From the IMG/VR virus record IMGVR_UViG_3300032046_000001, positions 1 through 64,000 of that record: a stretch of DNA of 64,000 nt, one strand, 5' to 3'. Of the stretch, positions 486 to 60,949 are shown one piece after another. Within the stretch, counting starts at the first letter, position 1, and each line of letters starts with the position of its first letter. The position numbers and the translations under genes are program-made. The notes beneath the pieces were generated by a model. The model had not been told where the DNA came from and ran no database searches. It worked only from the letters and a program-made list of their open reading frames with translations.

Positions 486-1112
486 TCAATATTCCTTATA
501 AAAATGATTATAAATATGATTCCACGATTTTCCATTTTTTATATACGAAACCATTACCGTTGAAATATCATATAATTTTGATATTTCAATATTTTTAAAT
601 CCCAATTTAATCAACATGTGAATTTGATGTATTTGTTTTTCTATTAATTTTGAAGGTCTATTTTCTTTAAGTATTTCACTCAATTTATTTTTATGTTCTT
701 CTGATAATTTTTTATCTTTATGTGATTCACTCATTTTCTTTTTAGATTCTTCTGAAAAATATTTACCAATATGATGTAATTGTTGATGTTCTCCATGAGA
801 TATCAATTCGAGATTATTTAAAATATTATTTTCTTTTATTTCATCTTTATGATGAACATCACACTCTTCTGTTATTTCTCCAATAAAAGTTTCATACATT
901 AATCTATGAATTTTAAATGTTTTTGTTTTATTTTTTTTGTATAATTTGATATTAAAATAATATTTAATATCTTTATACTGTTTTAATATTTTTTCTTTTC
1001 CAAATTTTAATGATTTAACTCTACCTAAATTACTAATCATATAATCTGGATAATCTTTTATAATTTTCCAAACTTCATTTTCTAAATCTAAATTATTATA
1101 ATTATCACTCAT
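486..1112 (-). CDS. NUMOD4-HNH homing-type endonuclease with NUMOD3 and C-terminal HTH
   Basis: EVWKII..YPDYMISNLGRVKS (NUMOD4), HRL...DVHHKDEIKENNILNNLE..H (HNH), SEESKKKMSE (NUMOD3). Confidence 0.9.
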   Translation of the reverse strand: MSDNYNNLDLENEVWKIIKDYPDYMISNLGRVKSLKFGKEKILKQYKDIKYYFNIKLYKKNKTKTFKIHRLMYETFIGEITEECDVHHKDEIKENNILNNLELISHGEHQQLHHIGKYFSEESKKKMSESHKDKKLSEEHKNKLSEILKENRPSKLIEKQIHQIHMLIKLGFKNIEISKLYDISTVMVSYIKNGKSWNHIYNHFYKEY

Positions 1113-1211
1113 TTTTTAAATTCTCCAGTTTGAATTTTACCAGTAAATAAAATTATAAGAGAGCGGGATTACTGGTTATCCTTTTCGAGTGATCATCTCT
1201 ATCTCTCTTAT
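1113..1211 (-). ncRNA. Structured leader RNA element, copy A (three-way junction plus pseudoknot), upstream of an HNH gene
   Basis: Minus strand reads AUAAGAGAG AUA GAG-AUGAUCA-CUC GAAAA GGAU-AACCAGUA-AUCC CG CUCUCUUAU ... UACUGGU ... ACUGGAG ... AUG. The same architecture recurs at three other loci with compensatory changes. Confidence 0.75.
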
Positions 1212-22451: not shown

Positions 22452-23035
22452 CTTAAATCCTCCTCTATATGATTCCAATTCCTTTTATTTTTAATATTAG
22501 AAATTGTCAATCGACTAACTCCAAACATATCAGCTATTTCTTGTTGAGTTAATATTCCTTCTTTTAATAATAATTTTATTTGAATAACTTGTTCTTCTGT
22601 TAATTTATGATTTGGATGATTTTCTCCTTTGACATTATAATGATTTTTAGACATTAATTTTTTTGTTTTGTCAGAAAAATGTTTACCCAAATTTGGACTA
22701 TTATTTTTATTATTATGAAAACTATTATGTTCTAATTTTGGCATTAATTTTAAATTTTCTAAATTATTATTTTCTTTATCTCCATTAATATGATGAATAC
22801 ATTCATCATTCTTTAATTTATAATTATTAAAAGTTTCATAAACTAATCTATGAATATAATTTAAATTATATTCATTATTTTCTTTATATAGCTTTATATT
22901 ATAATACTCATTAATATTTTTTAATTTTTTTAATATTTTACCACATTTATACCTTTTAAAACTTTTAATTCTGCCTAAATTACTTATAAGGTAATCTCCA
23001 TTGTATCCATCGATTTCTTTCCAAGTTTCATTCAT
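22448..23035 (-). CDS. NUMOD4-HNH homing-type endonuclease
   Basis: ETWKEIDGYNGDYLISNLGRIKS; HRLVYETF; CIHHINGDKENNNLENL; HTH LTQQEIADMFGVSR. Confidence 0.9.
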   Translation of the reverse strand: MNETWKEIDGYNGDYLISNLGRIKSFKRYKCGKILKKLKNINEYYNIKLYKENNEYNLNYIHRLVYETFNNYKLKNDECIHHINGDKENNNLENLKLMPKLEHNSFHNNKNNSPNLGKHFSDKTKKLMSKNHYNVKGENHPNHKLTEEQVIQIKLLLKEGILTQQEIADMFGVSRLTISNIKNKRNWNHIEEDLR

Positions 23036-27639: not shown

Positions 27640-29643
27640 TTATATCTCCAATTGTTCGAATCTTCTTCGAGGAAATTCATATTCTCTGCGTTCTTTAACC
27701 CAGTTATTAATGGGTGTTAGATAACCTACAACCCTTGTATACTTCTCATTTATTTGTTCTCCACATATTGGACACAATGCTCCATTAGTTACAGAAACAT
27801 GTCCGTTAGAACATTTAGCGAAACATGCGTTAAGAGCAAAATGATCTAATCCACAAGATGTCGCAAACGATATGAGATCTACCATTTGTTTTTTACTTGT
27901 TTTAGCACTGATGTTCAAATGACTAATTACGCCTCCTCCGAAGAACTTAGACAATTTCCCATCAATCTTTGCTCTTGAAATCAAATCAATGTTTTCCCAA
28001 AGTGGGACAAATTGATTAGAATATAATATACTTTCACTATCACCAAAATACACTTTGTCTTTTTTAGCCAAGTTTATAGCGGCACCTTCACCTGGGATCT
28101 GTTCCAGATTAAAAGGAACTTGGTACTCACCAGCCAAATCATTTAATAGATCATTACAATATTTAAAAAGTTCAATCGCTTCATCTTGAGACTGAACTAA
28201 ATCAATACCTAATGTTTTAAACGCTTCATATATTCCGTTAAAACCAATCGTACTAAAAAACATTGTGTCAAGATCAAGCCATTTCATAGGCTTAAAAAAT
28301 TGAAGAAAATTCTGATTAATTCTATCTTTTATTAGTGCTCGATGTGCAACTAATATTTTGGCCGAATCATACATTGCACGTTTAAGCGATTCCTTAAATA
28401 AATCGAGAGTTTTGGTCTTTCTTGCAAGTCTTACAAGATTGATTGTAACAACCCTATGACTACCTAAATTCAATCCACCATTACCAAAACTATCAATTCC
28501 TTTATATTTCATAAGTTCAGTTTTATTATTAATCATTCGACAACAACTTGCAATCTTGGCTTTATCATTTGTTATGAATATGTTAAATACACCCTCCGTA
28601 TTATATTCAGCCAAGTCTTCTAAGAATGCCTTATCTCCAACTTCACGATTCTCAGCATCAATAAACAAACTTACTGTCACAATTGGGAATCGATATGGAA
28701 TATTAGTAAGAGGATCTTTCTGAGATATAAATTTCATGAAAACACGTTGAACAGCCATAATCACTTCGATTATATCAAGTGGAGAAGTACCATCGGGATA
28801 ATAATAATTTTTAAACATGTTTTCTAATGTTTTTCTACAATATAAAGAAACATTGGAAAATGGGCTATCACCACCAATTCTAAAATTATTATTGGCAACA
28901 TGTACAAATGATTGAAAATCATTTTCGATTTTCTTTTCAATCTCACATATCAAACTATCTGGCCATAATTTTTCTTCAAAGGTTACACCAGTTTCCATTG
29001 TTGTTAGCAAATCATTAATACTACTAACCATCTCATTAACTTCTTTATTGATATACCATGCATAATTAACTAAAAGATCACCAAAGGCAACAGCACCAGC
29101 GAATTCTTGAGACATTGACATAAGATGTTCAATACACTGTGCTATAAATGATGATGCTCTCTTAGGTGGTTTACTACTCAAAGTTCCATATGGTCGCCCA
29201 TTCAACATAATGTTATATGTTGATATAGCAACACAATATGGAACATTAATCTTCGTTAAATCATGTGGATAGAACTTTCCATCAAGACAACTTGAAATTA
29301 ATCGATTTGCCTCTTCTAATCCAAATATTTTTTGGACATATTTCCACAATAAATAATACCCATCTAATTTCATCAGTCCTTTCATAATTTCTGATGAAAA
29401 AGTATTTAAATTTTTTAACTGGCCAACATTAGCATTAGGATCAACAGAAATATCACTTGTGTGATTTTCAAAATATTGCCGACTAATCGTGGCAATATCT
29501 AATTTATCTCTCGATATTCCTGATAACTCTAAATAGTCTTTTCCCTTTGGTGTGTTATTAAATTTATTGTATAAATCATTAAACTCTGATGGAAAATTCA
29601 TTTCAATCCTAAGCATAATTTCTAACCCTCTTATAAACTTCAA
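27640..29643 (-). CDS. nrdD: Anaerobic (class III) ribonucleoside-triphosphate reductase
   Basis: YPHDL, YC, SQEFAGA, ASCCR, EQIPGE, GGVISH, C..GH..CPICG, TRVVGYL glycyl-radical motif. No ATP cone is evident, and the start may be the ATG at 29616. Confidence 0.95.
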   Translation of the reverse strand: MKFIRGLEIMLRIEMNFPSEFNDLYNKFNNTPKGKDYLELSGISRDKLDIATISRQYFENHTSDISVDPNANVGQLKNLNTFSSEIMKGLMKLDGYYLLWKYVQKIFGLEEANRLISSCLDGKFYPHDLTKINVPYCVAISTYNIMLNGRPYGTLSSKPPKRASSFIAQCIEHLMSMSQEFAGAVAFGDLLVNYAWYINKEVNEMVSSINDLLTTMETGVTFEEKLWPDSLICEIEKKIENDFQSFVHVANNNFRIGGDSPFSNVSLYCRKTLENMFKNYYYPDGTSPLDIIEVIMAVQRVFMKFISQKDPLTNIPYRFPIVTVSLFIDAENREVGDKAFLEDLAEYNTEGVFNIFITNDKAKIASCCRMINNKTELMKYKGIDSFGNGGLNLGSHRVVTINLVRLARKTKTLDLFKESLKRAMYDSAKILVAHRALIKDRINQNFLQFFKPMKWLDLDTMFFSTIGFNGIYEAFKTLGIDLVQSQDEAIELFKYCNDLLNDLAGEYQVPFNLEQIPGEGAAINLAKKDKVYFGDSESILYSNQFVPLWENIDLISRAKIDGKLSKFFGGGVISHLNISAKTSKKQMVDLISFATSCGLDHFALNACFAKCSNGHVSVTNGALCPICGEQINEKYTRVVGYLTPINNWVKERREYEFPRRRFEQLEI

Positions 29644-34017: not shown

Positions 34018-34480
34018 TTTTTACAACATCCTCCCACGCCATTCTTGCAAGAGAATAAGCGTCGGCTAAATTGTCATCAGAGAACTCAATGCCAAATTTT
34101 TTATAAACCTGTAACAGCATCAAATTTTTCTTGGCATTACCACTACCAGTAATAAATTTTTTTAATACTTTTGGTTCGATAACTTTGAAATTTAAAGATT
34201 CTTTCTTCATCATGATTCTAATATAATAATGAAGAGCACCCAATTGAATAAGGGTATTTCCCTTCGAATTAAATGATACTCCTTCTATATTAATAATAGA
34301 ATCTTTTTGAGTATATTTTTGAATTTCTTTCCATATACTTATAAAACGAGCTTCAATTTCTTCAGTACTTTTGGTATTAAATAATTTTGATTGTATTATA
34401 TTGCCTCTTTCATCGAGAACAATAATTCCAGTTCCGGTTAGCGAAGGATCTATGCCTATAAATATTTTTTTATCCAACAT
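33998..34480 (-). CDS. ruvC: RuvC-like Holliday junction resolvase
   Basis: IGIDPSLTGTG, IEG, LKKFITGSGNAKK, DDNLADAYSLA; likely ATG at 34480. Confidence 0.9.
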   Translation of the reverse strand: MLDKKIFIGIDPSLTGTGIIVLDERGNIIQSKLFNTKSTEEIEARFISIWKEIQKYTQKDSIINIEGVSFNSKGNTLIQLGALHYYIRIMMKKESLNFKVIEPKVLKKFITGSGNAKKNLMLLQVYKKFGIEFSDDNLADAYSLARMAWEDVVKNDKIFD

Positions 34481-35219
34481 GTGACCAACTCCTTCCAATT
34501 TTTATATATGAAATTGTTCTTCGACTAACTCCGAACATATCAGCTATTTCTTGTTGAGTTAATATTCCATCTTTCAATAATAATTTTATTTGAATAACTT
34601 TTTGTTCGGTTAATTTTGAATTTGGATGTTTTTCACCTCTAAAATCAGCATGGTTTTCACTCAATTTCTTTTTGTGTTCTTCTGAAAGTGAAAATCCTTT
34701 CTTTTTTTCACTTATTTTATTTTTTGATTCTTCTGAGTGGTGTTTTCCAAGCATTGATTTTGGATGTTTTTCACCTCTAAAATCAGCATGGTTTTCACTC
34801 AATTTCTTTTTGTGTTCTTCTGATTTAGGTCGTCCTTTTCTGTCACAACTCATTTTCTTTTTCGATTCGTCAGAAAAGATATAACCACTTATTCCATCAC
34901 CACCATCAGTTATATTAACAAGAGATCCAGTTTTTAAATTAATTCTACCAATTTCATTAATTAATTGTTTTTCAAATTTAAATGAATTTTCTTCATTTAA
35001 ATTTTCATATAATTTAAAAACAATTGGTTCTAATCCAGACTGTTTAATTTTATTTATTTTATTTTTAAATAATCTACATCGACTATTGTCTAATTCTTTG
35101 TATCTATTATCTTTTCCTTTACCAATATATATTGGTTCAAAAATAAAACATACATCATTATAACAATATCTTCCAGATTTTCTTGGATCTAAATAAATAT
35201 AAATGTAAAATTTGTTCAT
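34470..35219 (-). CDS. GIY-YIG-like homing-type endonuclease with NUMOD3 repeats and HTH
   Basis: FYIYIYLDPR...PIYIGKGKDNR...E..LI..IGR...LVNITDGGDG; NUMOD3 repeats. Confidence 0.85.
   Translation of the reverse strand: MNKFYIYIYLDPRKSGRYCYNDVCFIFEPIYIGKGKDNRYKELDNSRCRLFKNKINKIKQSGLEPIVFKLYENLNEENSFKFEKQLINEIGRINLKTGSLVNITDGGDGISGYIFSDESKKKMSCDRKGRPKSEEHKKKLSENHADFRGEKHPKSMLGKHHSEESKNKISEKKKGFSLSEEHKKKLSENHADFRGEKHPNSKLTEQKVIQIKLLLKDGILTQQEIADMFGVSRRTISYIKIGRSWSHVG
34621..34823. repeat. Exact 65-bp intragenic direct repeat (duplicated NUMOD3-like module)
   Basis: 34621-34685 is identical to 34759-34823 and encodes SEEHKKKLSENHADFRGEKHP twice. Confidence 0.9.
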
Positions 35220-37567: not shown

Positions 37568-37661
37568 TTTATAATCGCCTGTCAATTATTTCCTGAAATT
37601 AATTTAAAGAGAGCAGGAAGTTCAGGATTACTTCTTTTCGACGGCCAATCTATCTCTCTTT
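37568..37661 (-). ncRNA. Structured leader RNA element, copy B
   Basis: AAAGAGAG AUA GA-UUGGCCG-UC GAAAA GAAG-UAAUCCUGAA-CUUC CUG CUCUCUUU ... UUCAGGA ... ACAGG ... AUG. Confidence 0.75.
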
Positions 37662-37666
37662 TTTAT

Positions 37667-38002
37667 TTAAATGCTATTCCATAATACCATTGCTCTTTCT
37701 TTTCGTGGAACTTCTTGTTTTTCGCGTTCTATATCTAATTCGAGTTTCTTTTTTAATGGTGTTATTTCATCTATTTTTTTACCACATCTTAAACAAATTT
37801 TTTTGATATATCGTTTATCAAAATCTATAGGATCTTTTATTAATCTACAAGGTGGGGATTCTGGAGGCATAGGACGACCGTCAGTTATTTTTTTACAGTC
37901 TTCAAGATATCTTTGATGATGTTTTATATTACTTATTAATTGTACTTCTGTAATTCTTTCTAATATTTCCCAATCATGAAAACCTAATTTACACCAGTTC
38001 AT
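37667..38002 (-). CDS. Hypothetical protein with zinc-finger-like motif
   Basis: CKLGFHDW...CLRCGK. Confidence 0.65.
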   Translation of the reverse strand: MNWCKLGFHDWEILERITEVQLISNIKHHQRYLEDCKKITDGRPMPPESPPCRLIKDPIDFDKRYIKKICLRCGKKIDEITPLKKKLELDIEREKQEVPRKERAMVLWNSI

Positions 38003-38889: not shown

Positions 38890-40035
38890 TCAAAAATTCT
38901 CAAAATCAAAATCACTTCTATTAGAAAATAAGATATCAACATCTTCTTCTAATACTTCTACATTCCCTTTTCTTAGTGCCTTGTACATTGTATTTGACTC
39001 GGTGAAATTATCATTATTCAAAATATTAGTCACATAGTTTCTTTTAGCGATAATTTCTGTATTCGGTGGATCTTTAAAAACTTCGGATATTATTTTAAAC
39101 CACACCAATCTTAAATTATTAGATATAATTGAAGTTTTATTTTCTTCTTCAATTATTTTTGATATAGTTTTATCATTACTATTTTTTATAAATATTTTTT
39201 TCTTATTGAGAACATTATGATATAAATCTTCCATACTACCAACACACTCAATTAGACCACTGATTATTTTTGGAATGGTTTTAGGACCAATACTTTTAAT
39301 CTTAGGAACATCATCAGTTTTATCACCAAGTACAGCCATAACCAATGGAAAATATTTATCTGGTATGTCAACTTTAAATTTTAAATATGTTGACATAATT
39401 TCACCTTTTTTAACTATCTTTATTTTCTGACCTGATTTACAAAATTGATATATGTCACTTCCGAGAGAAATAGTCTGAAATAAATCATGATCATTTGAAT
39501 AAATTATATTACATGAATCTTGTAATGTAATCAATGAATTACTTATAAGATAGTATGGAATAAAATCAGCTTCGAAATTTTGTAACAAAAATAATTTACA
39601 ACTTGGAATTTTATTTATAACTTTTTCGGATAATTTCAAATTATTTTGAATAGTAGAAAAAAATACATCTTTGTCTATTTGATTAAGATTAAATAAATCA
39701 CCAATTTTACGATTACTTTTATAATTTTTATCAATATTCGTATGATAATATGAATGTCCCATTTCTGCGAAAAATATGAAATTAATATCGAGACTACGTT
39801 TTATCGCATATTTTTTATGGAATGAAAGAAAAGATATCAAAGACTCAAAAATAGAAGTATCAATAAATTTAGAATATTTTGTAGATTCTACAATATTAAC
39901 AACAAATTCTTCCAAATAGAGACAATTTAAGATGTTACGTAAATCTATAAATAAATTTAAAATTTTATAATTATTAGAATATGATAAAATGTTGTCTAAA
40001 ATCGAATATGTGGGGTAATAAGAAATGACGTTCAT
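38890..40035 (-). CDS. 5'-3' exonuclease / T4 RNase H-like (FEN family)
   Basis: FID, YKSNR, FEADFI, SNDHDLFQ, LGDKTDDVPKIKSIGPKT; ATG at 40035 coupled to the upstream mini-ORF. Confidence 0.85.
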   Translation of the reverse strand: MNVISYYPTYSILDNILSYSNNYKILNLFIDLRNILNCLYLEEFVVNIVESTKYSKFIDTSIFESLISFLSFHKKYAIKRSLDINFIFFAEMGHSYYHTNIDKNYKSNRKIGDLFNLNQIDKDVFFSTIQNNLKLSEKVINKIPSCKLFLLQNFEADFIPYYLISNSLITLQDSCNIIYSNDHDLFQTISLGSDIYQFCKSGQKIKIVKKGEIMSTYLKFKVDIPDKYFPLVMAVLGDKTDDVPKIKSIGPKTIPKIISGLIECVGSMEDLYHNVLNKKKIFIKNSNDKTISKIIEEENKTSIISNNLRLVWFKIISEVFKDPPNTEIIAKRNYVTNILNNDNFTESNTMYKALRKGNVEVLEEDVDILFSNRSDFDFENF

Positions 40036-40085
40036 AACTGTCCTGACCATCGAGGATCTAAATAAGTATAAATATAATAATTCAT
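40032..40085 (-). pseudogene. 17-codon remnant of a GIY-YIG-like endonuclease
   Basis: MNYYIYTYLDPRWSGQL* versus MNKFYIYIYLDPRKSGRY of 34470..35219; intact SD AGGAG. Confidence 0.75.
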
Positions 40086-40178
40086 AAATAATCTCCTGTT
40101 AATTATTTCCTGAAAAGAAAAAGAGAGAAGGAAGTTCAGGATTACTTCTTTTTCGAGCTTAAGTCTCTATCTCTCTTA
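40086..40178 (-). ncRNA. Structured leader RNA element, copy C
   Basis: AAGAGAG AUA GAG-ACUUAAG-CUC GAAAAA GAAG-UAAUCCUGAA-CUUC CUU CUCUCUU ... UUCAGGA ... ACAGGAG ... AUG. Confidence 0.75.
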
Positions 40179-40185
40179 TTATCCA

Positions 40186-41676
40186 TTAAGAAACCTTCCC
40201 AAATCTTGAGTAATATAATCTTGATTTAATAACATCAAATTTATCAGCAAATTTAGAACCATAACGTTTCTTGGATTCATCTTTTGTCATCATACCCCAT
40301 TGTTCTGGAACTAATTTGACAGCAACATCACCAATAACAACTTTTAATTTACGATCATGTTCTAAAATAATATCAAAACCAGTTTCCTTAGATTCTTCTT
40401 GAATCATAAGACCAATATTGGCAAAATTTAAAATTCGTTGAAATACTTCAGAAAACTTTGCACCATATTTTTCTCTAACCTGTACTGGTGTTGATTGTAA
40501 CCAGTTAACATAACTTTGTTTAACTTCTATATCATCAATTGAAACTTTTAAACCATCTGGTTCTAAAAAGAACTCAATCGATTTAAATTTAGGAATAAAA
40601 ACAGTATCAAGAACTTCACCTGTGTCTGTACCACAAAGTTGTAAACAAACAGGATCGCTCATTTCTCTATCAAATTCATAGTATTTGTTTCTAACCACTT
40701 TTACAGTAATGTTTTTATTGTTATTTCTATATAATTTTTTCAGTACATTAGTTATCTTAATGGTATCAACAGAACCATATAGTAGGTCAGCACTATTATC
40801 TTCAAAAATCAAATTCATATTACATTGTAAATGATGAAGTTGATCAGACACATTCAATATATCAGTCTTTTCTTTTATTTCAGAGTCTTTCTCTTTAACT
40901 CCAAATTTAACAGTAGGTGTTTCATTTGTTAGATCAAGCAGACATGTTAATTCATGACACTCATCAAGTTCTGTATTGCCAATTTCATCTATGACTTTTT
41001 TCAAATCATTACATGTTTCAATTTTATCTTGTTCTGGAATTAGATCTTTAGTTTCTTTTTCAACAGTCACTAAAACAAGATTAGGTTCAGTTGTTTTATC
41101 AACAGTAGCAACAATCTTTGCTCTATCACCATCACGATCAATAATTTCTTTTTCAAATCGATCTTCAGTTTCTCCAGAAATTTTTGTCACATCTTTTATC
41201 ACGTTTTCTTCTTCCTCGACAACTTTTTTAAACTTTTCCATTTCTTTTATAGTTTTTTCATTTTTCTTATCTATCAATTTACCACATGATTCAACAATCT
41301 TTTCAAGTGGAACATTGATATTGCCAGAATTTTCTTTTTCTAAAAATTTTCTATACTGATTTACAAATGTTTTATTATTTGGATCGTTATTTATTTTTAA
41401 AAACTCTTCAGGATCAGGATATTCATTTGGGTAGAAGTCTAAATCGAAAACATTTATTGGCATGATTACGTCAAATTTATAATCTGATGGTAATGTAAGT
41501 ATTTTATCATTTCGTCCAACTTTTTCTAAACTGAAAACGAGTCTTGGAATATCTTCAGATTCATCAACATGACATATAATATAATAATCTTTGTTCAAGA
41601 TATGTTCACATTTCTGACCAGCTTCAAGTAGGATCAATCTTATTTTATTAATTTCATCTCGTTCAAATGGAGTCAT
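40186..41676 (-). CDS. Hypothetical protein (496 aa)
   Basis: Long acidic ORF; two similar C-terminal units (LKV.I.D..VK...W......KYG.KF). Confidence 0.7.
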   Translation of the reverse strand: MTPFERDEINKIRLILLEAGQKCEHILNKDYYIICHVDESEDIPRLVFSLEKVGRNDKILTLPSDYKFDVIMPINVFDLDFYPNEYPDPEEFLKINNDPNNKTFVNQYRKFLEKENSGNINVPLEKIVESCGKLIDKKNEKTIKEMEKFKKVVEEEENVIKDVTKISGETEDRFEKEIIDRDGDRAKIVATVDKTTEPNLVLVTVEKETKDLIPEQDKIETCNDLKKVIDEIGNTELDECHELTCLLDLTNETPTVKFGVKEKDSEIKEKTDILNVSDQLHHLQCNMNLIFEDNSADLLYGSVDTIKITNVLKKLYRNNNKNITVKVVRNKYYEFDREMSDPVCLQLCGTDTGEVLDTVFIPKFKSIEFFLEPDGLKVSIDDIEVKQSYVNWLQSTPVQVREKYGAKFSEVFQRILNFANIGLMIQEESKETGFDIILEHDRKLKVVIGDVAVKLVPEQWGMMTKDESKKRYGSKFADKFDVIKSRLYYSRFGKVS

Positions 41677-42753: not shown

Positions 42754-43404
42754 TCATATAACATTGTACCATGATCTTCCATTTTTAATATTTGAAATAG
42801 TACTCTGATCAATATTATATATTTTTGATATATCTTTATTTTTAAATTTCAATTTTAATAACATTTTAATTTGGATAATTTGTTTAATAACTAATTTATG
42901 ATTTGTATTATTTTCTCCTATAAATTTTCCATTAAGTGATTCACTTATTCTTTGTTTTGTTATATCAGATCTATGTTTTCCAAAATTTGGATTATTTTCT
43001 CCTTTCATGTGTTCGCTAATTTTTTGTTTGTGTCTATCTGATAATTTTCTTCCTATTGTGTTTTTATTATTAATTTTATGTAAACTATTATGATCTGATT
43101 TTGTTTTCTTTTCTAAATTTTTCCAATAATTATTTTTTATATTTTCATCTTTGTGATGGACACACTCATCCTGTTTTAATTTATCATTATAGAAAGTTTC
43201 ATAAACTAATATATGAATTTTTTTACTTTTACCATGATCATTTCTATATAAACTAATCTGAAAATAACCATGAGAATCTGTACATAATTTTAATATTTTT
43301 TCTTTATTAAATTTCAGTGACTTTATTTTTCCAAAGTCACTGATCAAATAATCTGAATATTCATTAATTATTTTCCATGTTTCTTTATTCTTCATCTTCA
43401 TCAT
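42754..43404 (-). CDS. NUMOD4-HNH homing-type endonuclease
   Basis: ETWKIINEYSDYLISDFGKIKS; CVHHKDENIKNNYWKNLE; NPNFGKHRS; HTH. Confidence 0.88.
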   Translation of the reverse strand: MMKMKNKETWKIINEYSDYLISDFGKIKSLKFNKEKILKLCTDSHGYFQISLYRNDHGKSKKIHILVYETFYNDKLKQDECVHHKDENIKNNYWKNLEKKTKSDHNSLHKINNKNTIGRKLSDRHKQKISEHMKGENNPNFGKHRSDITKQRISESLNGKFIGENNTNHKLVIKQIIQIKMLLKLKFKNKDISKIYNIDQSTISNIKNGRSWYNVI

Positions 43405-45313: not shown

Positions 45314-46297
45314 CTATAGATTCAAATAATCTAAAATCTCATTTATATTTGTTGAATTTATTCCAATTTTACCAACTACAATACCAGCCACTATATTCGC
45401 CAATTCAACTGATTCTTCTAATGACAATATTTCTGATAAATATGATAATGTAAGTGTTGATATTACTGTATCACCCGCACCACTTACATCATAAACTTCT
45501 TTAGCTTTAGTTGGTAAACTTATCATTTTGTGTCCATCGTTTCTTATAATAGATATTCCATCTTTTCCCCGTGTAACTATAAGATAATCAAGATTTAATT
45601 TATGATATAATTTCATTCCAGCTTTATATATTTTATCTTCAGTATCAACAACCATCTTAGAAATTTTTGATAGTTCTTTTAAATTGGGTGTTAAAAAATT
45701 GGCATTTTTATATTTAAGATAATTAGATCCTTTAGGATCTATAAAAATTAATTTATTATTTTTTTTACACGTATTAATTATTTTCTGAGTCAATTTAAAA
45801 GTCAAAACTCCTTTTAAATAATCAGAAATAATAACTGCCGAACATTTGTCAATATGACTATTGACAAATTCTAATATTAATTTTTCTAATTTAGAATCTA
45901 TTTCTCTCGTTGATTCTTTATCAAATCTAATTAATTGATAATTTTCTGAAAAAATTCTATTTTTTATTGTTGTTGGTCTGTCATAATCTATAAAAATACC
46001 ATCAATTGAACACACATTCTTTAATTTATTTAATACAAATTCTCCATTTGAATCATTTCCGATTATTCCACATGGAATAACATTTCCACCTAATGATAGT
46101 ATATTAGATATAACATTTCCACTTCCACCAATCATTTTAAAAGTTTTTTCAATATCCACAATAGGAACTGGAAATTCTGGAGAAATGCGTTCTACTTTAC
46201 CAATAATATATTTATCTACCATAATATCTCCAATAACTAATATATTATGATAATTAAATTTAGAAAATATATTTTTAATTTTTTCTTTACTGAACAT
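45314..46297 (-). CDS. rfaE: D-glycero-D-manno-heptose-7-phosphate kinase (HldE/RfaE domain I, PfkB family)
   Basis: VIGDIMVDKY..G.VERISPEFPVPIV, GGSGNV, RPTTIKNR, ISDYLKG, DPKG, TPNLKE, VYDVSGAGDTV. Confidence 0.92.
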   Translation of the reverse strand: MFSKEKIKNIFSKFNYHNILVIGDIMVDKYIIGKVERISPEFPVPIVDIEKTFKMIGGSGNVISNILSLGGNVIPCGIIGNDSNGEFVLNKLKNVCSIDGIFIDYDRPTTIKNRIFSENYQLIRFDKESTREIDSKLEKLILEFVNSHIDKCSAVIISDYLKGVLTFKLTQKIINTCKKNNKLIFIDPKGSNYLKYKNANFLTPNLKELSKISKMVVDTEDKIYKAGMKLYHKLNLDYLIVTRGKDGISIIRNDGHKMISLPTKAKEVYDVSGAGDTVISTLTLSYLSEILSLEESVELANIVAGIVVGKIGINSTNINEILDYLNL

Positions 46298-46901
46298 GAT
46301 ACCAGATTTTTCCTCTTTTTATATCCGAAATCGTTATTCTACTAACTCCAAACATGTCAGCTATTTCTTGTTGGGTTAATATTCCTTCTTTTAATAATAA
46401 TTTTATTTGAATTACTTGTTCTTCTGTTAATTTGTGTTGTGGATGATTTTCACCTTTATAATTTAATTTTCCACTTTTAAACTCTTCTTTTCTCGTTTTA
46501 CTTATTTTAATTTTTGTTTCATTTAATAATATTTTTCCTTTGTTATGATATTTTGAGTGTCTTGAATGTGGTTCAGATTTCAAATTATCAATAAAATTAT
46601 TTTCTTTATCTTCGTTTGTATGATGAACATCATAATTTTTTTCTAATTTTTTGTTGAAAGTTTCATAAACTAATCGATGAATAACTTTAGTTTTAGATTT
46701 CTTATTCTTATTATGTAAATCAACATAAAAATATCCCTTATGATTTCTACACTGTTTTAATATTCTACAATCAGTACCTTTCCATTTTATAAAACTTTTA
46801 ATTCTCCCAAGATTACTAACTTGATATTCTGGATATTCTTCAATAGTTTTCCAAACTTCATTTTCTAAATCATTAATATCTAAATTTTCATATATTTTCA
46901 T
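46287..46901 (-). CDS. NUMOD4-HNH homing-type endonuclease
   Basis: EVWKTIEEYPEYQVSNLGRIKS; HRLVYETF; DVHHTNEDKENNFIDNL; ATG at 46901 after SD AAGGAG. Confidence 0.9.
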   Translation of the reverse strand: MKIYENLDINDLENEVWKTIEEYPEYQVSNLGRIKSFIKWKGTDCRILKQCRNHKGYFYVDLHNKNKKSKTKVIHRLVYETFNKKLEKNYDVHHTNEDKENNFIDNLKSEPHSRHSKYHNKGKILLNETKIKISKTRKEEFKSGKLNYKGENHPQHKLTEEQVIQIKLLLKEGILTQQEIADMFGVSRITISDIKRGKIWYHVQ

Positions 46902-46987
46902 TATAACTCCTTGTATTATTTTCCTTGAATGATTAAAGAGAGCAGGTAGCAAGGTCTACTTTTCGAGCGATCGACTCTATCTCTCTT
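46902..46987 (-). ncRNA. Structured leader RNA element, copy D
   Basis: AAGAGAG AUA GAG-UCGAUCG-CUC GAAAA GUAG-ACCUUG-CUAC CUG CUCUCUU ... CAAGG ... CAAGGAG ... AUG. Confidence 0.75.
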
Positions 46988-46992
46988 ATTAT

Positions 46993-48741
46993 TTACGGAC
47001 TAATATCATATATGTATATTTCAACAACATCACTATTGTGTTGACCGTCAAAAATACCATGTGTATCAAAATCTGCCCAACCGCCAGCTAATATATAATT
47101 TAATGAACCATCAACCGATGTTGAATCAATATTTATATACTCATACGCATTAGATGATGTTGCGTCGTGAAAATTCATAATATCTTCGATTGTTTGTTCA
47201 ATATACATTTGAATATTTTCATCATCTGTCGATGCACCAATATCAAAATATGAACCACAATCATAAGTTTCTCGCGGATCTAATAAACTACACGTTGAAT
47301 CTGAACATAATACACATGCAGTACTATCAGCAACATCAAAATCAATTACAATTTCTGTTCGATTGTCATATACTTCATCTTCCATTACCAACGAATCAGC
47401 AACAGGATTATTAATAATATAAGCAGCTTCTAAACTTATTAGTCTGGCATGATATGGTTTGAAAAAATTAATAACTTTATTTAATTCAGTTAGTGATTCA
47501 ATACCAAGTACAGTAGTTGCAATATTAAAATCAGCACTAATATTGAGTATCATCCAGTCATTTAAATCTTGAAGTAGTAAAGATAATAAAGTCAAACCGT
47601 GTCCTGACAAAAGATAACTTCTAACACTAAGATATAAATCCGAATTTATGGTTTGTAATAGTGTTGCAAGTGTTGTTCGAGTCAGTGATGTAAAAAAATT
47701 TGTTGACTGACTTCTCGTAAATAAATCATTAAATTGACTTATTCTTAAATCTCGTAAACTTCTTGAATCATTTTGTGTTGGATCGGTTGAATATAATCGT
47801 TGTGTTAAATTTTCATATTGTGAAAGAATGATACTGGTTTCTAAAACTGATGTTCCATCATAACAAGAAAAAAGTGGATCTGTCGAACCATTAGTGCGAT
47901 CATAATATTCATCAAAAAGATAGACTATTGACAAATATAATTCTAATAATGACACATTAAAATTTAATTCTGTCAATTTTATATCTGGCGTTAGCGTACC
48001 ACCAGATGAATATGTTATATATTGATCTTGAATATGTCGAGATAAAATAGACATAATCACATTTAGACTTGATAAGTTATATCTTGGTCTTAATGAAAAA
48101 TATGGTGATTTTGATGGTAAACCAATTATATTAGTAGTCAGAAGATTTCTGATGTTTGTCTCAGTTAATAACCAATGAGGATCAAGTTGAACAATATCAT
48201 TAAAAGCTATATCAGCAAAAGGAACATCAATAACTCCTGGAGGTAAATATCGTTCACTTCGGAAAACTAATCTATTCGATGAATCAAGTTCTAACCAATA
48301 TTCAGCAAGATCAATATCGATAAGACCATAATATCCCATTATATCAATAATAGATTCTGGTGTGCCTTTAATCTTATATAAATTAACAAGATCTAAAAAA
48401 AAATTAGCTTTGGTGAGAAATGATAATGGTTTGGTTGAAAAATTATAACCAAAACTTTTAAATAACTCATCAAGTTGAGTTTCAGGCATTGAGAAAATAT
48501 CAGATACTTGTTTTTGAGTAGATATTATGGTTCTGTGAGATGCATACCAGTTTATAAGAAAATTTCTTAATCTTTTATAATCTTGTGTGCTGTACACTAA
48601 TTGATCGATCGTATTTTCGAAAAGCTGTGTTGATGTTCCCTGTTCACTCTTTGATAATACTTGTGTATTTATATCGAGATTAGAGACCGTTGTTCCATCG
48701 ATATAATTCATTATGTTAAAAAAATCTGTAACTGAAAACAT
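46993..48741 (-). CDS. Putative baseplate wedge/structural protein
   Basis: LDELFKSFG..LVNLYKIKGTPESI (P2 gpI/T4 gp7-like pattern), INFFKPYH. Confidence 0.6.
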   Translation of the reverse strand: MFSVTDFFNIMNYIDGTTVSNLDINTQVLSKSEQGTSTQLFENTIDQLVYSTQDYKRLRNFLINWYASHRTIISTQKQVSDIFSMPETQLDELFKSFGYNFSTKPLSFLTKANFFLDLVNLYKIKGTPESIIDIMGYYGLIDIDLAEYWLELDSSNRLVFRSERYLPPGVIDVPFADIAFNDIVQLDPHWLLTETNIRNLLTTNIIGLPSKSPYFSLRPRYNLSSLNVIMSILSRHIQDQYITYSSGGTLTPDIKLTELNFNVSLLELYLSIVYLFDEYYDRTNGSTDPLFSCYDGTSVLETSIILSQYENLTQRLYSTDPTQNDSRSLRDLRISQFNDLFTRSQSTNFFTSLTRTTLATLLQTINSDLYLSVRSYLLSGHGLTLLSLLLQDLNDWMILNISADFNIATTVLGIESLTELNKVINFFKPYHARLISLEAAYIINNPVADSLVMEDEVYDNRTEIVIDFDVADSTACVLCSDSTCSLLDPRETYDCGSYFDIGASTDDENIQMYIEQTIEDIMNFHDATSSNAYEYINIDSTSVDGSLNYILAGGWADFDTHGIFDGQHNSDVVEIYIYDISP

Positions 48742-57531: not shown

Positions 57532-58221
57532 TTGAAAATATTTGAAAATTTAAATTTACAAGATTTGGAAAACGAAATATGGAAAGATATTGTAGATTAT
57601 GATGGTGATTATCAAGTTAGTAACTTTGGAAGAATTAAATCATTAAAATTTAAAAATGAAAAAATATTAAGACAAAATAAAGATAACAAAGAATATTTAT
57701 TTATTAATCTGTGTAAAAATGGAAAATACAAACCTAAGAGAATTCATATTTTAGTTTATGAAACTTTTAATAATTATAAATTAAAAGAAGATGAATGTGT
57801 TCATCACAATAAAGATTGGTGTAAAGAAAATAATAATTTTGATAATTTAATAATGATGTCTAAAAAAGAGCATAATAAATTACACATGAAAGGTAAAAAT
57901 AATCATAATTTTGGAAAACATCATTCAGAAGAATCGAAAAAGAAAATAAGTGAAAAAATTACAATGAGTGAAAGTAGTAAAGGTGAGAATAATCCAAGTC
58001 ATAAATTAAAAGATGGAGAAGTTTGGTTAATCAAAAAAATATTAAATTCTGATTATTATAAATCTGGAAAAATAAGTCAAACTTTTATAGGAAAGATGTT
58101 TGGAGTTAGTTCAATGATTATTTCGTATATAAAGACTGGAAAACTTTGGTCTCACATTAAATATGATGAATTTAAAACTAATTCCCGCTTTGACTTGGAG
58201 CTTGATGACAATGATGAATAA
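57532..58221 (+). CDS. NUMOD4-HNH homing-type endonuclease
   Basis: EIWKDIVDYDGDYQVSNFGRIKS; CVHHNKDWCKENNNFDNL; NHNFGKHHSEESKKKISE; HTH. Confidence 0.88.
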   Translation: MKIFENLNLQDLENEIWKDIVDYDGDYQVSNFGRIKSLKFKNEKILRQNKDNKEYLFINLCKNGKYKPKRIHILVYETFNNYKLKEDECVHHNKDWCKENNNFDNLIMMSKKEHNKLHMKGKNNHNFGKHHSEESKKKISEKITMSESSKGENNPSHKLKDGEVWLIKKILNSDYYKSGKISQTFIGKMFGVSSMIISYIKTGKLWSHIKYDEFKTNSRFDLELDDNDE

Positions 58222-59831: not shown

Positions 59832-60386
59832 ATGGAGATTGTATACGAAGATTATCCAAGTAATAATACAATATTTAAAGTTCTCGTCGCTGCTGGTATT
59901 ATAGTCAGAACTAATCATGAATCTGGTGATGAGGAATTACTTTTAATTCAACGTTCACCTGCTGATAAATGGCCACTACTTTGGGAAATTCCCAGAGGTA
60001 AATGTGATCATGTGCAGAAAAATGGTGAGAATGAAAAAATATTACATTGTTTAAAACGTGAAATAAAGGAAGAAGTTGGTTTAGATATAAGAATAATAAA
60101 ATTGATTGATATTTTTGAATATTCGTCAAAAGACAGAAAAAGAAGAGCAATACAATATAATTATTTATGTAGATTAACTAATGAAAGTCAACATATTACA
60201 CTATCAAATGAACATATCAATTATAAATGGGTAAGATCAATGTCAGAAGTACAATTGATGTTGGCAAGTGAACTGGTTAAAGTTATTGCTCAAATATTTA
60301 ATGAAGAAGATAAAATTATCAATTATCCAGAAGAGATACTTCCTATTGAAGAAAAACTTGATAAATATCTTGGTAAATTAAAATGA
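59832..60386 (+). CDS. Nudix hydrolase
   Basis: LLLIQRS...WEIPRG...E....CLKREIKEEVG Nudix box; LSNEH..YKW. Confidence 0.88.
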   Translation: MEIVYEDYPSNNTIFKVLVAAGIIVRTNHESGDEELLLIQRSPADKWPLLWEIPRGKCDHVQKNGENEKILHCLKREIKEEVGLDIRIIKLIDIFEYSSKDRKRRAIQYNYLCRLTNESQHITLSNEHINYKWVRSMSEVQLMLASELVKVIAQIFNEEDKIINYPEEILPIEEKLDKYLGKLK

Positions 60387-60949
60387 AAATATATGAAAAT
60401 TTAGATATTAATGATTTAGACAGAGAAATCTGGAAAACTATAAAAGATTTTCCAGATTATCAAGTTAGTAATTTTGGTAGAGTTAAAAGAAAAATTCATG
60501 ATAAATACAATCGTAAATTAAAAATATTAAAACAATTTAAAAGTAAAGAATATCTACGTGTTAGTTTTTTCAAAAATGGAAAAATAAAACACAAATCAAT
60601 TCATATAATAATATTTGAATCTTTTAATAATTGTAAATTAAAAAATGATGAATGTATTCATCATATTGACAAGAACAGAGAAAATAATTATTATAAAAAT
60701 TTAAAATTAATGAGTAAGAAAAAACACAATAGTCTTCATAAAAAAGAAGAAAATAAAGGAAATTTAAATCCAATGTTTGGCAGTAAAAGACCTGGAGAAA
60801 TATCTGGAAATCATAAATTACTAGAACAAGATGTTTATGACATTCGAAAATCATTAGAATTAAAATTATATACACCAAAACAATTATCTTGGATGTTTGA
60901 TGTTAGTGTAGAAACAATTTCACTAATAAAAAATAAAAAGCGTTGGTAG
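60383..60949 (+). CDS. NUMOD4-HNH homing-type endonuclease
   Basis: EIWKTIKDFPDYQVSNFGRVK; CIHHIDKNRENNYYKNL; HTH. Confidence 0.88.
   Translation: MKIYENLDINDLDREIWKTIKDFPDYQVSNFGRVKRKIHDKYNRKLKILKQFKSKEYLRVSFFKNGKIKHKSIHIIIFESFNNCKLKNDECIHHIDKNRENNYYKNLKLMSKKKHNSLHKKEENKGNLNPMFGSKRPGEISGNHKLLEQDVYDIRKSLELKLYTPKQLSWMFDVSVETISLIKNKKRW

What the first reader, a model, noticed from the sequence alone, without database searches (positions are those of the whole stretch)
46902..46987. Leader P2 loop is a different self-complementary hexamer in each copy: kissing-loop dimerisation code
The 7-nt P2 loops are A-UGAUCA, U-UGGCCG, A-CUUAAG and U-CGAUCG. Three are perfect palindromes. The fourth is self-complementary only with terminal G-U pairs, which works for the minus-strand RNA and not for DNA or the opposite strand. 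The sequence varies while palindromy is kept, as in the retroviral dimer-initiation kissing loop. Inference: each leader homodimerises only with its own kind, giving orthogonal, concentration-dependent sensing of its own transcript (for example copy-number feedback on a toxic nuclease), or it scaffolds a dimeric RNP.
Basis: partly seen in the sequence, partly recalled or inferred. Interest (0 to 1): 0.85.

Follow-up and report, generated by a model that had tools for sequence, protein, structure and literature searches.

The report
Self-pairing loops in phage mRNA leaders
Four short RNA leaders in front of homing-endonuclease genes of a jumbo phage belong to a known but uncharacterised RNA family (int-alpA), and across that family one hairpin loop almost always carries a self-complementary sequence that varies from copy to copy. 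This is the comparative signature of two RNA molecules pairing with each other.

Summary
The window holds exactly four copies of a ~90-nt minus-strand leader, with P2 loops A-UGAUCA, U-UGGCCG, A-CUUAAG and U-CGAUCG. The leader is not new: it is a divergent, AT-rich branch of Rfam RF02996 (int-alpA RNA), a three-way junction plus pseudoknot. Here it sits before HNH and GIY-YIG homing-endonuclease genes of a 312-kb jumbo phage.

The palindrome rule holds well beyond the window.
- **Phage-type set:** among 29 distinct P2 hairpins from viral and metagenome contigs, 19 carry a 6-nt or longer Watson-Crick palindrome (shuffles 3.9) and 27 carry one of 4 nt or longer. At least 13 different hexamers occur, always in the same register.
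- **Proteobacterial set:** 17 of 22 distinct P2 loops of bona fide int-alpA RNAs also hold a 4-nt or longer palindrome (expected about 5).
- **Recurring alternative:** a GACG tetraloop, which is a known retroviral kissing loop.

Symmetric RNA-RNA self-pairing, as a kissing loop or an extended P2 duplex, is the best reading.

- "A different code in each copy" fails. The same phage has at least 11 copies, with CUUAAG three times and CGAUCG twice.
- The G-U strand argument fails.
- Concentration sensing is untested.

The parts
46902..46987 (-). Leader copy D (the finding): P1 46981-46987 with 46936-46942, junction AUA, P2, GAAAA, P3, CUG, then tail to the start codon
   Evidence: 49.9 bits with R1; Rfam int-alpA 35.3 bits, gathering score 35.8
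46965..46977 (-). Copy D P2 hairpin GAG/CUC with loop U+CGAUCG (palindrome 46968-46973)
46946..46959 (-). Copy D P3 hairpin. Its loop ACCUUG (core 46950-46954) is an anti-Shine-Dalgarno-like sequence
46923..46927 (-). Copy D site 1 (CAAGG), complementary to the P3 loop; this is the family's pseudoknot partner
46907..46913 (-). Copy D site 2 (CAAGGAG): the Shine-Dalgarno sequence with a 5' flank that is also complementary to the P3 loop. It lies in the loop of a short A-U hairpin (P4), 5 nt before the ATG at 46899-46901
46287..46901 (-). HNH homing endonuclease gene (NUMOD4 + HNH_3 + HTH) served by leader D
40086..40177 (-). Leader copy C: P2 40155-40167, loop A+CUUAAG (palindrome 40158-40163), J2/3 GAAAAA, P3 40131-40148, site 1 40108-40113, SD 40093-40098
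   Evidence: (78.1 bits)
40032..40085 (-). 17-codon remnant of a GIY-YIG endonuclease ORF (MNYYIYTYLDPRWSGQL, then a stop) behind leader C; the frame beyond is full of stops
38890..40050 (-). 5'-3' exonuclease (flap endonuclease-like) gene that now follows leader C in another frame (both Pfam hits are below the families' gathering cut-offs)
37568..37660 (-). Leader copy B: P2 37640-37650 (GA/UC plus a U-G pair), loop U+UGGCCG or U-GGCC (37642-37647), P3 37617-37634, site 1 37591-37596, degenerate SD CAGGCG 37576-37581
   Evidence: Rfam int-alpA 36.6 bits, above gathering; 72.1 bits
36875..37567 (-). HNH homing endonuclease gene (NUMOD4, HNH_3, NUMOD3) served by leader B
1113..1209 (-). Leader copy A: P2 1187-1199, loop A+UGAUCA (palindrome 1190-1195), P3 about 1166-1181, site 1 1139-1144, SD ACUGGAG 1123-1129
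   Evidence: (48.6 bits)
486..1112 (-). HNH homing endonuclease gene (NUMOD4, HNH_3, NUMOD3) served by leader A

Best explanation
**What it is.** The four elements are AT-rich members of the int-alpA RNA class. This is a cis-acting 5' leader built as a three-way junction: P1, UA, P2, GAAAA, P3, CU, P1'.

**How the leader is arranged.** The P3 loop is an anti-Shine-Dalgarno-like sequence. It can pair with either of two downstream copies of its complement. Site 1 is the family's pseudoknot partner. Site 2 is the real ribosome-binding site, displayed in the loop of a small hairpin, P4.

**How P2 works (inferred).** P2 is a very short stem of 2-4 bp. Its apical loop carries 1-2 unpaired nucleotides followed by a self-complementary tetramer to hexamer. 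The most likely role is symmetric pairing with the same loop of a second leader molecule. That pairing could be a kissing complex or, after strand exchange, a 12-bp extended P2 duplex with two bulges. Because P2 alone is predicted to be barely stable, dimerisation would complete the junction. It would thereby set which partner the P3 loop takes, and so how well the downstream gene is translated.

**What is shown.** Family membership, the structure with its covariation, the family-wide palindrome rule in a fixed register, and the doubled P3-loop complement.

**What is inferred.** That the RNAs dimerise in the cell, and that dimerisation affects translation. The direction of any such effect is unknown.
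For: **Family and fold.**
- Rfam int-alpA hits: 36.6 bits for copy B and 35.3 for copy D, against a gathering score of 35.8.
- Across 47 distinct phage-type leaders, 98.4% of cells are paired and 13 of 15 pairs show changes on both sides. No shuffle out of 500 reaches this, and slid controls collapse.

**Palindrome rule.**
- 19 of 29 distinct P2 hairpins have a 6-nt or longer palindrome and 27 of 29 have 4 nt or longer. Shuffles give 3.9 and 14.9.
- Counting only loops defined by the minimum-free-energy fold, 23 of 29 have 4 nt or longer, against 5-8 expected (maximum 16 in 5000). For proteobacterial int-alpA it is 17 of 22 against 4.4-5.6 expected (maximum 13).
- All 18 proteobacterial loci tested score 47-72 bits against Rfam int-alpA.
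- Register test: Watson-Crick in 26, 24 and 20 of 33, against 7-13 when slid.
- At least 13 different palindromic hexamers occur.
- P3 hairpins of the same RNAs serve as a control: only 1 of 29 has a 6-nt or longer palindrome.

**Other support.**
- GACG tetraloops recur as the alternative P2 cap in both sets. They are an established retroviral kissing loop (PMC516450; PMC7357161).
- No partner in cis: the hexamer recurs within 300 nt in 1 of 28 leaders, against 4.3 copies expected.
- An isolated P2 is predicted at -1 kcal/mol or weaker in 83% of phage-type cases and at 0.0 for three of the four window copies. Two P2 segments form a duplex of -9 to -15 kcal/mol.
- RNAcofold predicts a P2-mediated homodimer for all four copies. 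The mean gain is -8.9 kcal/mol, against -5.7 when the loop is shuffled to be non-palindromic. The real loop is better in 36 of 41 leaders.
- The P3-loop complement is present twice in the tail, as site 1 and the SD, in 39 of 41 leaders.
Against: - There is no experimental or transcript evidence. No RNA run was listed for this phage.
- Nearest-neighbour folding cannot model kissing loops, and the shuffled-loop control still shows a sizeable predicted dimer gain.
- Some members lack any 4-nt palindrome. The only two phage-type exceptions in the whole-P2 test are UAUCU and UCGCU. Six of 29 phage-type and 5 of 22 proteobacterial loops fail the stricter loop-only test, and these counts include the GACG tetraloops.
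- Four GC pairs or six AU-rich pairs are weak unless the loops are pre-organised and Mg2+ is present.
- In some copies the outer pair of the hexamer could instead close P2 within the same molecule, for example GAGU/GCUC in copy D.
- Whether leader mRNA reaches concentrations at which such dimers form is unknown.
Confidence: 0.6

Rival explanations
1. Each leader carries a private dimerisation code, so it pairs only with its own transcripts and senses its own concentration, for example as copy-number feedback on a toxic nuclease.
For: - Neighbouring leaders on one contig differ in every case seen (L045 three copies, L266 three, L261 two, L059 two, L284 two, window B/C).
- Leaders with an identical P3 and P1 carry up to four different P2 palindromes, so P2 changes faster than the rest or is exchanged.
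Against: - The 312-kb phage has at least 11 copies but only about 8 loop types: CUUAAG three times and CGAUCG twice. UGAUCA and CGAUCG share GAUC, and UCAUGA and CCAUGA share CAUG.
- CUUAAG is combined with six different P3 modules across contigs.
- With about 13 types in use, unlike neighbours are expected by chance.
- The proteobacterial elements are usually single-copy, yet they keep the palindrome.
- Nothing links dimerisation to dose sensing.
Confidence: 0.2
2. The palindromes come from a mutational process, not from selection for dimerisation. Quasi-palindrome template switching or gene conversion at the P2 inverted repeat would keep making the loop complementary to itself.
For: - P2 plus its loop is a near-perfect 12-14-nt DNA palindrome, which is a substrate for template-switch correction (established knowledge, not tested here).
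- P2 and P3 modules assort independently, so recombination between leaders does occur.
Against: - The 1-2 extra nucleotides on the 5' side of the loop break the symmetry, yet they are retained in nearly every copy and in the same place. Correction should erase them.
- P3 hairpins in the same RNAs show no such tendency: 1 of 29.
- The rule holds in distant GC-rich bacteria with different P2 lengths.
- The non-palindromic alternative that recurs is specifically GACG, a known kissing loop.
Confidence: 0.1
3. The palindrome is a DNA-level signal, such as a site for a dimeric DNA-binding protein, a restriction-modification enzyme or a cruciform, and not an RNA feature.
For: - Every 4-6-nt palindrome is formally a possible type II restriction or operator half-site pair.
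- The outer GAG...CUC arms are conserved.
Against: - At least 13 unrelated hexamers cannot be one protein's site.
- The element is a structured RNA with strand-specific G-U pairs in P1, P2 and P3 and a strand-specific Rfam match.
- Palindromic hexamers as a class are only mildly under-represented in the window (1430 observed against 1521-1662 expected), so there is no sign of restriction pressure focused on them.
- The one extra base makes the DNA site asymmetric.
Confidence: 0.05
4. The loop acts within one molecule. Its outer bases extend P2 to leave a special tetraloop, or the loop docks on another part of the same leader, and the apparent palindromy is a by-product.
For: - Minimum-free-energy folds absorb the outer pair in several copies.
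- Rfam's alignment draws copy D's P2 as 4 bp with a 5-nt loop.
Against: - A closing pair explains at most the outer two positions. The central tetramer is still self-complementary and uses all four Watson-Crick pair types, and a hairpin loop cannot exploit that within one molecule.
- In most copies the 5' bulge prevents simple extension of the stem.
- No covarying partner or second copy of the hexamer lies nearby.
Confidence: 0.05

Closest known systems
int-alpA RNA motif (Rfam RF02996; from the 224-motif comparative survey, PMC5737381)
   Same: - The same three-way junction with the conserved junction strands UAG / CGAAAAG / CCU.
- The same P3 loop (CCUU-like) and the same pseudoknot to a 3' AAGG-like stretch.
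- Copy B scores above and copy D just below the family's gathering score.
- The Rfam consensus P2 loop is itself one unpaired base plus ACGU.
   Different: - This is an AT-rich branch with P1 fixed as AGAGAG/CUCUCU, and it is barely detected by the Rfam model. The default gathering search missed all four copies.
- It sits in a jumbo phage directly in front of HNH and GIY-YIG homing-endonuclease genes. The known members lie in integrative elements next to tRNA or tmRNA genes of Proteobacteria.
- It uses 6-nt AU-containing palindromes where the GC-rich members mostly use 4-nt GC palindromes.
- I found no text in the held library that mentions a palindromic P2 loop or dimerisation for this family. 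The survey's supplement is not held.
Retroviral dimer-initiation kissing loops (HIV-1 DIS hexamer palindrome; GACG tetraloops of murine leukaemia, alpha- and gammaretroviruses and Maedi-Visna virus)
   Same: - An apical-loop palindrome whose sequence varies while self-complementarity is kept.
- Unpaired flanking bases.
- The option of converting a kissing complex into an extended duplex.
- GACG tetraloops appear here as the recurrent alternative cap.
   Different: - The loop is 7-8 nt with flanking bases only on the 5' side. The DIS has a 9-nt loop with purines on both sides.
- The stem is only 3 bp and is part of a three-way junction.
- The context is an mRNA leader, not a packaged genome.
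- There is no nucleocapsid-type chaperone and no evidence of dimers.
Ribozymes and introns that dimerise through palindromes (hatchet ACGU; HYER1/5 group IIC introns; double-hammerhead forms of viroid, newt and Penelope-like hammerheads)
   Same: A short or unstable helix of a multi-helix junction carries a palindrome, so two copies complete each other. In the HYERs, members with the palindrome dimerise and members without it stay monomers. The double hammerhead is cited from my own knowledge; the Lunse et al. 2016 title appears in the reference list seen.
   Different: No catalytic core is recognisable. By eye the junction strands (UA, GAAAA, CU) do not fit the hammerhead CUGAUGA...GAAA...UH core, and Rfam gives no ribozyme hit.
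Translational control of free-standing and intron-encoded homing endonuclease genes in T4-like phages by RNA structures that sequester the ribosome-binding site (established knowledge, not checked here)
   Same: A structured leader with a sequence complementary to the Shine-Dalgarno region lies in front of an endonuclease gene inserted between phage genes.
   Different: Here the anti-SD lies in the loop of a conserved junction RNA. A decoy copy of the SD is present. The module is shared with unrelated cargo genes in bacterial islands.

Membership tests
int-alpA RNA (Rfam RF02996) | Covariance-model score at or above the curated gathering score (35.8 bits) | tested here: inconclusive
   Copy B scores 36.6 bits (met). 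Copy D scores 35.3 bits, E 4.6e-6 in a 201-nt search (just below). Copies A and C were not listed at E<=1 in the whole-window search. All four were missed by the default gathering run. All four match one another at 48.6-78.1 bits with my model R1.
int-alpA RNA (Rfam RF02996) | Three-way junction P1-P2-P3 with conserved junction strands UAG, CGAAAAG and CCU | tested here: met
   Present in all four copies. Helices are supported by covariation in 47 distinct relatives.
int-alpA RNA (Rfam RF02996) | Pseudoknot between the P3 loop (CCUU-like) and an AAGG-like stretch 3' of P1 | tested here: met
   Site 1 is complementary to the P3 loop in 39 of 41 leaders, over at least 12 different loop sequences. 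It is aligned to model positions 67-71 by Rfam.
int-alpA RNA (Rfam RF02996) | Genomic setting in integrative elements of Proteobacteria near integrase or alpA genes | tested here: not met
   In the window the leaders precede HNH genes and one GIY-YIG remnant of an AT-rich (28% GC) jumbo phage. The proteobacterial loci fetched lie next to tRNA or tmRNA genes and precede genes of unknown function. This is a contextual feature, not a structural one.
Kissing-loop dimer-initiation element (HIV-1 DIS type) | Self-complementary sequence in an apical loop | tested here: met
Kissing-loop dimer-initiation element (HIV-1 DIS type) | Sequence varies among relatives while self-complementarity is kept (symmetric covariation) | tested here: met
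   At least 13 hexamers occur. Pair counts are 26, 24 and 20 of 33 in register, against 7-13 when slid.
Kissing-loop dimer-initiation element (HIV-1 DIS type) | Conserved unpaired purines flanking the palindrome on both sides | tested here: not met
   Flanking bases occur only on the 5' side. They are A or AA in GAG-stem copies but U, UA or UU in GAU-stem copies.
Kissing-loop dimer-initiation element (HIV-1 DIS type) | The RNA forms loop-dependent homodimers | not testable with these tools
   Only nearest-neighbour predictions of the extended-duplex form are available.
Hammerhead ribozyme (double-hammerhead type) | Catalytic core CUGAUGA ... GAAA ... UH around three helices | tested here: not met
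   The junction strands are UA, GAAAA and CU(G), read directly. There is no Rfam hammerhead hit at E<=1.

The most novel reading that the evidence does not exclude
int-alpA-class leaders work only as symmetric homodimers. The P2 loop is an address that decides which transcripts can pair. In a phage carrying a dozen paralogous leaders, the repertoire of palindromes partitions them into dimerisation groups. Translation of each homing endonuclease or cargo gene would then depend on the concentration of its own group of transcripts. This would be an RNA-only, dose-sensing translational switch shared by phages and bacterial integrative elements.
Probability: 0.2. Interest if true: 0.8.

Novelty: new variant of a known kind. 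Interest (0 to 1): 0.6.

Why it matters
**Rarity.** Natural RNAs known to act as homodimers are few (reviews PMC7357161 and PMC12990946). None of those listed in these reviews is a small bacterial or phage mRNA leader.

**A testable hypothesis for an orphan motif.** int-alpA is a motif without an assigned function. The family-wide, register-fixed palindrome gives it a concrete hypothesis that is cheap to test. The experiments are native gels, mass photometry, and symmetric compensatory mutants in a reporter.

**Wider range.** The finding extends the family from proteobacterial islands to homing-endonuclease cassettes of an AT-rich jumbo phage. This suggests the leader is a portable expression-control module for genes that mobile elements need to keep on a tight leash.

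**Mechanism.** The doubled complement of the P3 loop (a decoy plus the real ribosome-binding site) is a second handle on how the leader works.

Tried and rejected
- **Megablast against phage records.** A 4-kb stretch around the leader gave no match. The window was instead placed on IMG/VR contig IMGVR_UViG_3300032046_000001 by identical leader loci.
- **E. coli K-12 CP4-57 intA/alpA region.** It holds no int-alpA RNA. Proteobacterial members were therefore fetched with a pattern built from the Rfam consensus P3.
- **Supplement of the discovery paper.** It is not held. A full-text search for 'int-alpA' found only two unrelated uses.
- **RNA-seq evidence.** No RNA run was listed. Laying DNA contigs of four metagenome runs on copies B and C showed no variation in the leaders and only paralogue cross-alignments.
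- **Promoter and terminator scan** around the leaders: at chance level.
- **Relatives of the upstream 582-aa gene**, sought to find an endonuclease-free allele: only the same contig was returned.
- **Hammerhead reading** of the junction: rejected by eye (see the membership test).
- **The G-U strand argument.** Rejected, because loops with C-A flanks are as common as loops with G-U flanks.
- **Restriction-site avoidance.** Palindromic hexamers are only mildly depleted in the window.
- **The first MAFFT alignments (A1, A2).** They misplaced P3, so the model was built from six equal-length copies.

Full report
**1. The observation**

The stretch 46902-46987 (minus strand) runs from just after the stop codon of a 582-aa gene to the ATG of an HNH endonuclease gene. 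It reads P1 (AAGAGAG), AUA, P2 (GAG, loop U-CGAUCG, CUC), GAAAA, P3 (GUAG, loop ACCUUG, CUAC), CUG, P1' (CUCUCUU), then a tail with the ribosome-binding site.

Three further copies lie at 1113-1209, 37568-37660 and 40086-40177. Their P2 loops are A-UGAUCA, U-UGGCCG and A-CUUAAG. A covariance model built from six copies was run without filters over both strands of the window. It finds these four at 48.6-78.1 bits; the next hit scores 17 bits.

**2. What the leader is**

Rfam's default run reports nothing. With permissive filters, copy B matches RF02996, the int-alpA RNA, at 36.6 bits (gathering score 35.8). Copy D matches at 35.3 bits.

The match covers the whole model. The shared features are the same three helices, the same junction strands (UAG, CGAAAAG, CCU), the same CCUU-type P3 loop, and the 3' AAGG that Rfam annotates as its pseudoknot partner. 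The leader is thus an AT-rich branch of a known motif of unknown function.

Its host is the 312,420-bp contig IMGVR_UViG_3300032046_000001, from a sediment metagenome. This is a jumbo phage with 28% GC, split multisubunit RNA polymerase beta-type genes, NrdD and a UvsX-like recombinase.

**3. More copies**

Two pattern scans that fix only P1, the junction strands and P1' were run against viral and metagenome contigs. Neither pattern constrains the P2 loop. Together they gave 42 distinct cores. A covariance-model pass over 46 loci added six more with variant P1 or longer P2, giving 47 distinct sequences.

On this alignment the three helices are 98.4% paired. Thirteen of 15 pairs show changes on both sides. 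No shuffle out of 500 reaches this, and slid controls fall to 50-67% paired. G-U and U-G pairs in P1, P2 and P3, together with the strand-specific Rfam match, fix the RNA strand.

**4. The palindrome rule**

In the 29 distinct phage-type P2 hairpins, the longest Watson-Crick palindrome is 6 nt or more in 19 and 4 nt or more in 27. Loop shuffles, which keep the already symmetric composition, give 3.9 and 14.9.

A stricter count uses only the unpaired loop of the minimum-free-energy hairpin. There 23 of 29 hold a 4-nt or longer palindrome, against 5-8 expected (maximum 16 in 5000). The P3 hairpins of the same RNAs serve as a control: 1 of 29 has a 6-nt or longer palindrome.

The hexamers seen are UGAUCA, CUUAAG, CGAUCG, UUGCAA, UCUAGA, UCAUGA, UGUACA, CUAUAG, UACGUA, AUGCAU, UCGCGA, CGUACG, AUUAAU/UAAUUA and UAGCUA.

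They always abut the 3' strand of P2, with one or two unpaired bases on the 5' side. In that register, positions 3-4, 2-5 and 1-6 are Watson-Crick in 26, 24 and 20 of 33 distinct hairpins. The inner pair uses all four pair types. Registers slid by one or two bases give 7-13. This is ordinary helix covariation, except that the helix can only form between two identical loops.

**5. The rule holds for the whole family**

A genome scan with the Rfam-consensus P3 returned 44 instances. They come mostly from Betaproteobacteria, Gammaproteobacteria and other Pseudomonadota, with one hit in a Thermosulfurimonas MAG. All 18 loci that I re-scanned are int-alpA at 47-72 bits, typically next to tRNA or tmRNA genes.

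Their 22 distinct P2 loops contain CGCG (the commonest, in CCCGCGAA), GGCC (six variants, including UUGGCCG as in copy B), GCGC, AGCU, UCGA, UUCGAA, UUGCAA, UAAUUA and GCGCGC. In the loop-only test, 17 of 22 hold a 4-nt or longer palindrome, against 4.4-5.6 expected (maximum 13 in 5000).

GC-rich members mostly use four GC pairs, whereas the AT-rich phage uses six mixed pairs. That difference fits a requirement for a given pairing strength.

The main non-palindromic cap, in both sets, is a 4-bp stem closed by GACG. This tetraloop is a documented retroviral kissing loop, pairing through its CG (PMC516450; PMC7357161).

**6.

- **The loops are not private.** The phage has at least 11 copies. CUUAAG occurs three times (copy C, L081, L118) and CGAUCG twice (copy D, L007). 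UGAUCA shares GAUC with CGAUCG, and UCAUGA shares CAUG with CCAUGA.
- **Modules are shuffled.** CUUAAG is joined to six different P3 modules, and one P3 module to four different palindromes. P2 and P3 therefore assort independently.
- **The G-U argument has no force.** UGGCCG, UGCGCG, CGAUUG and CGUG need G-U on the sense strand. CGGCCA, C-CAUG-A and C-CGCG-A would need it on the other strand. The common denominator is the central tetramer.

**7. Rivals tested**

- **A partner in cis.** The hexamer recurs within 300 nt in only 1 of 28 leaders, against 4.3 copies expected.
- **A DNA-level site.** Thirteen or more unrelated hexamers, an asymmetric extra base, and only mild general depletion of palindromic hexamers in the window (1430 observed against 1521-1662 expected) argue against it.
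- **A mutational origin by quasi-palindrome correction.** The retained 5' bulge and the clean P3 control argue against it.
- **A role within one molecule.** The outer pair of the hexamer can close P2 in some copies. The central tetramer remains unexplained.

**8. Energetics (predictions only)**

An isolated P2 is predicted to be unfolded or marginal: 0.0 kcal/mol for three of the four window copies, and -1 or weaker in 83% of phage-type hairpins. The commonest proteobacterial P2 has only two base pairs. Two P2 segments form a symmetric duplex of -9 to -15 kcal/mol.

RNAcofold gives a P2-mediated dimer for all four leaders. The mean predicted gain is -8.9 kcal/mol, against -5.7 when the loop is shuffled to lack palindromes. 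The real loop is better in 36 of 41 leaders. These models cannot represent kissing loops.

**9. The rest of the leader**

The P3 loop is anti-Shine-Dalgarno-like. Its complement occurs twice in the tail in 39 of 41 leaders. Site 1 comes soon after P1'. Site 2 is the Shine-Dalgarno sequence together with its 5' flank.

Both sites covary with the loop across a dozen loop sequences, for example CCUUG with CAAGG and CAAGGAG, and ACCAGU with ACUGGU and ACUGGAG. Site 2 sits in the loop of a short hairpin (P4), a few bases before the start codon. The proteobacterial members show the same doubling (UUGAAGG twice).

I infer a switch between a decoy pseudoknot, which leaves the ribosome-binding site free, and a P3-P4 loop-loop contact, which masks the site. 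Dimerisation through P2 would stabilise the junction that presents P3. The direction of any effect is unknown.

**10. Context**

Three leaders precede intact NUMOD4/HNH_3 endonuclease genes. Copy C precedes a 17-codon GIY-YIG remnant and then a 5'-3' exonuclease-like gene, whose Pfam hits are below the curated cut-offs. In other contigs the same leader precedes ORFs that begin with the same YYIY-type N-terminus as this remnant, so they are probably full-length GIY-YIG genes; I did not check them.

Six further endonuclease genes in the window have no leader. They abut or overlap the preceding gene, or lie within about 50 nt of it. In the bacterial loci the downstream genes are of unknown function (for example DUF6387), not nucleases. 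The RNA is therefore a portable module and not a partner of one protein family.

**11. Comparison and novelty**

Functionally, the closest analogues are the retroviral dimer-initiation loops and the palindrome-dependent dimers of hatchet and HYER RNAs.

By membership it is int-alpA. All structural criteria are met, the score criterion is borderline, and the genomic-context criterion is not met.

I found no text in the held library that links int-alpA to palindromic loops or dimerisation. The discovery paper's supplement could not be read, so prior notice there cannot be excluded.

**12. Verdict**

- Dimerisation is the best-supported reading (confidence about 0.6).
- The orthogonal-code and dose-sensing reading is possible but weakened (about 0.2).
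- This is a new variant and a new property of a known RNA family.

Noticed in passing
window 46907-46927, 40093-40113, 37576-37596, 1123-1144 (and 39 of 41 related leaders): The complement of the P3 loop occurs twice in each tail. The first copy is the annotated pseudoknot partner. The second is the Shine-Dalgarno sequence plus its 5' flank, shown in the loop of a small hairpin. All three elements covary. This suggests a decoy-versus-sequestration switch.
   Followed up: partly
window 40032-40085 and 38890-40050: Leader C is followed only by a 17-codon GIY-YIG remnant and then, in another frame, a gene with weak 5'-3' exonuclease Pfam hits (below the curated cut-offs). The endonuclease gene has been lost while the leader stays intact (78 bits).
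   Followed up: yes
window 17874-18506, 22448-23035, 34470-35219, 42754-43404, 57532-58221, 60383-60949: Six more homing-endonuclease genes have no leader. Five are of the NUMOD4/HNH type (57532-58221 matches NUMOD4 and NUMOD3 but not HNH_3) and one is GIY-YIG-like. They abut or overlap the upstream gene, or lie within about 50 nt of it. The phage therefore uses two ways of expressing such genes.
   Followed up: partly
L261:5061-5113, L272, L273, L285; L122, L209: A 4-bp P2 capped by a GACG tetraloop recurs in both the AT-rich phage set and the proteobacterial set, as the alternative to a palindromic loop.
   Followed up: partly
loci L242-L286, L045, L081, L118: P2 and P3 modules of the leader occur in many combinations. 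CUUAAG goes with six P3 types, and one P3 goes with four palindromes. This points to recombination between leaders at the invariant junction strands.
   Followed up: partly
window 46988-46995, 40178-40188, 37661-37669, 1210-1264: In copies B, C and D the leader starts within about 10 nt of the stop codon of the preceding gene, so a terminating ribosome would cover the 5' strand of P1. Copy A starts 55 nt after the stop at 1265-1267. Possible coupling to upstream translation was not examined.
   Followed up: no
window 3210-7313 and 8038-10380: Two large ORFs match phage multisubunit RNA polymerase beta-type subunits, as in nucleus-forming and other jumbo phages. NrdD lies at 27640-29643 and a UvsX-like recombinase at 25801-27051.
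   Followed up: partly
window 4-199: Imperfect direct repeats of 39-65 nt (families D14 and D17; start-to-start spacing 63 nt for D17, 126 nt for D14) at the left edge of the window, inside ORF 12-281.
   Followed up: no
L261:2482-2537: A leader copy with loop U-CGAUUG, which is self-complementary only through two G-U pairs. It also has changes in J2/3 (CUCA AAAAG) and in the P3 loop. It is possibly a decaying copy.
   Followed up: no
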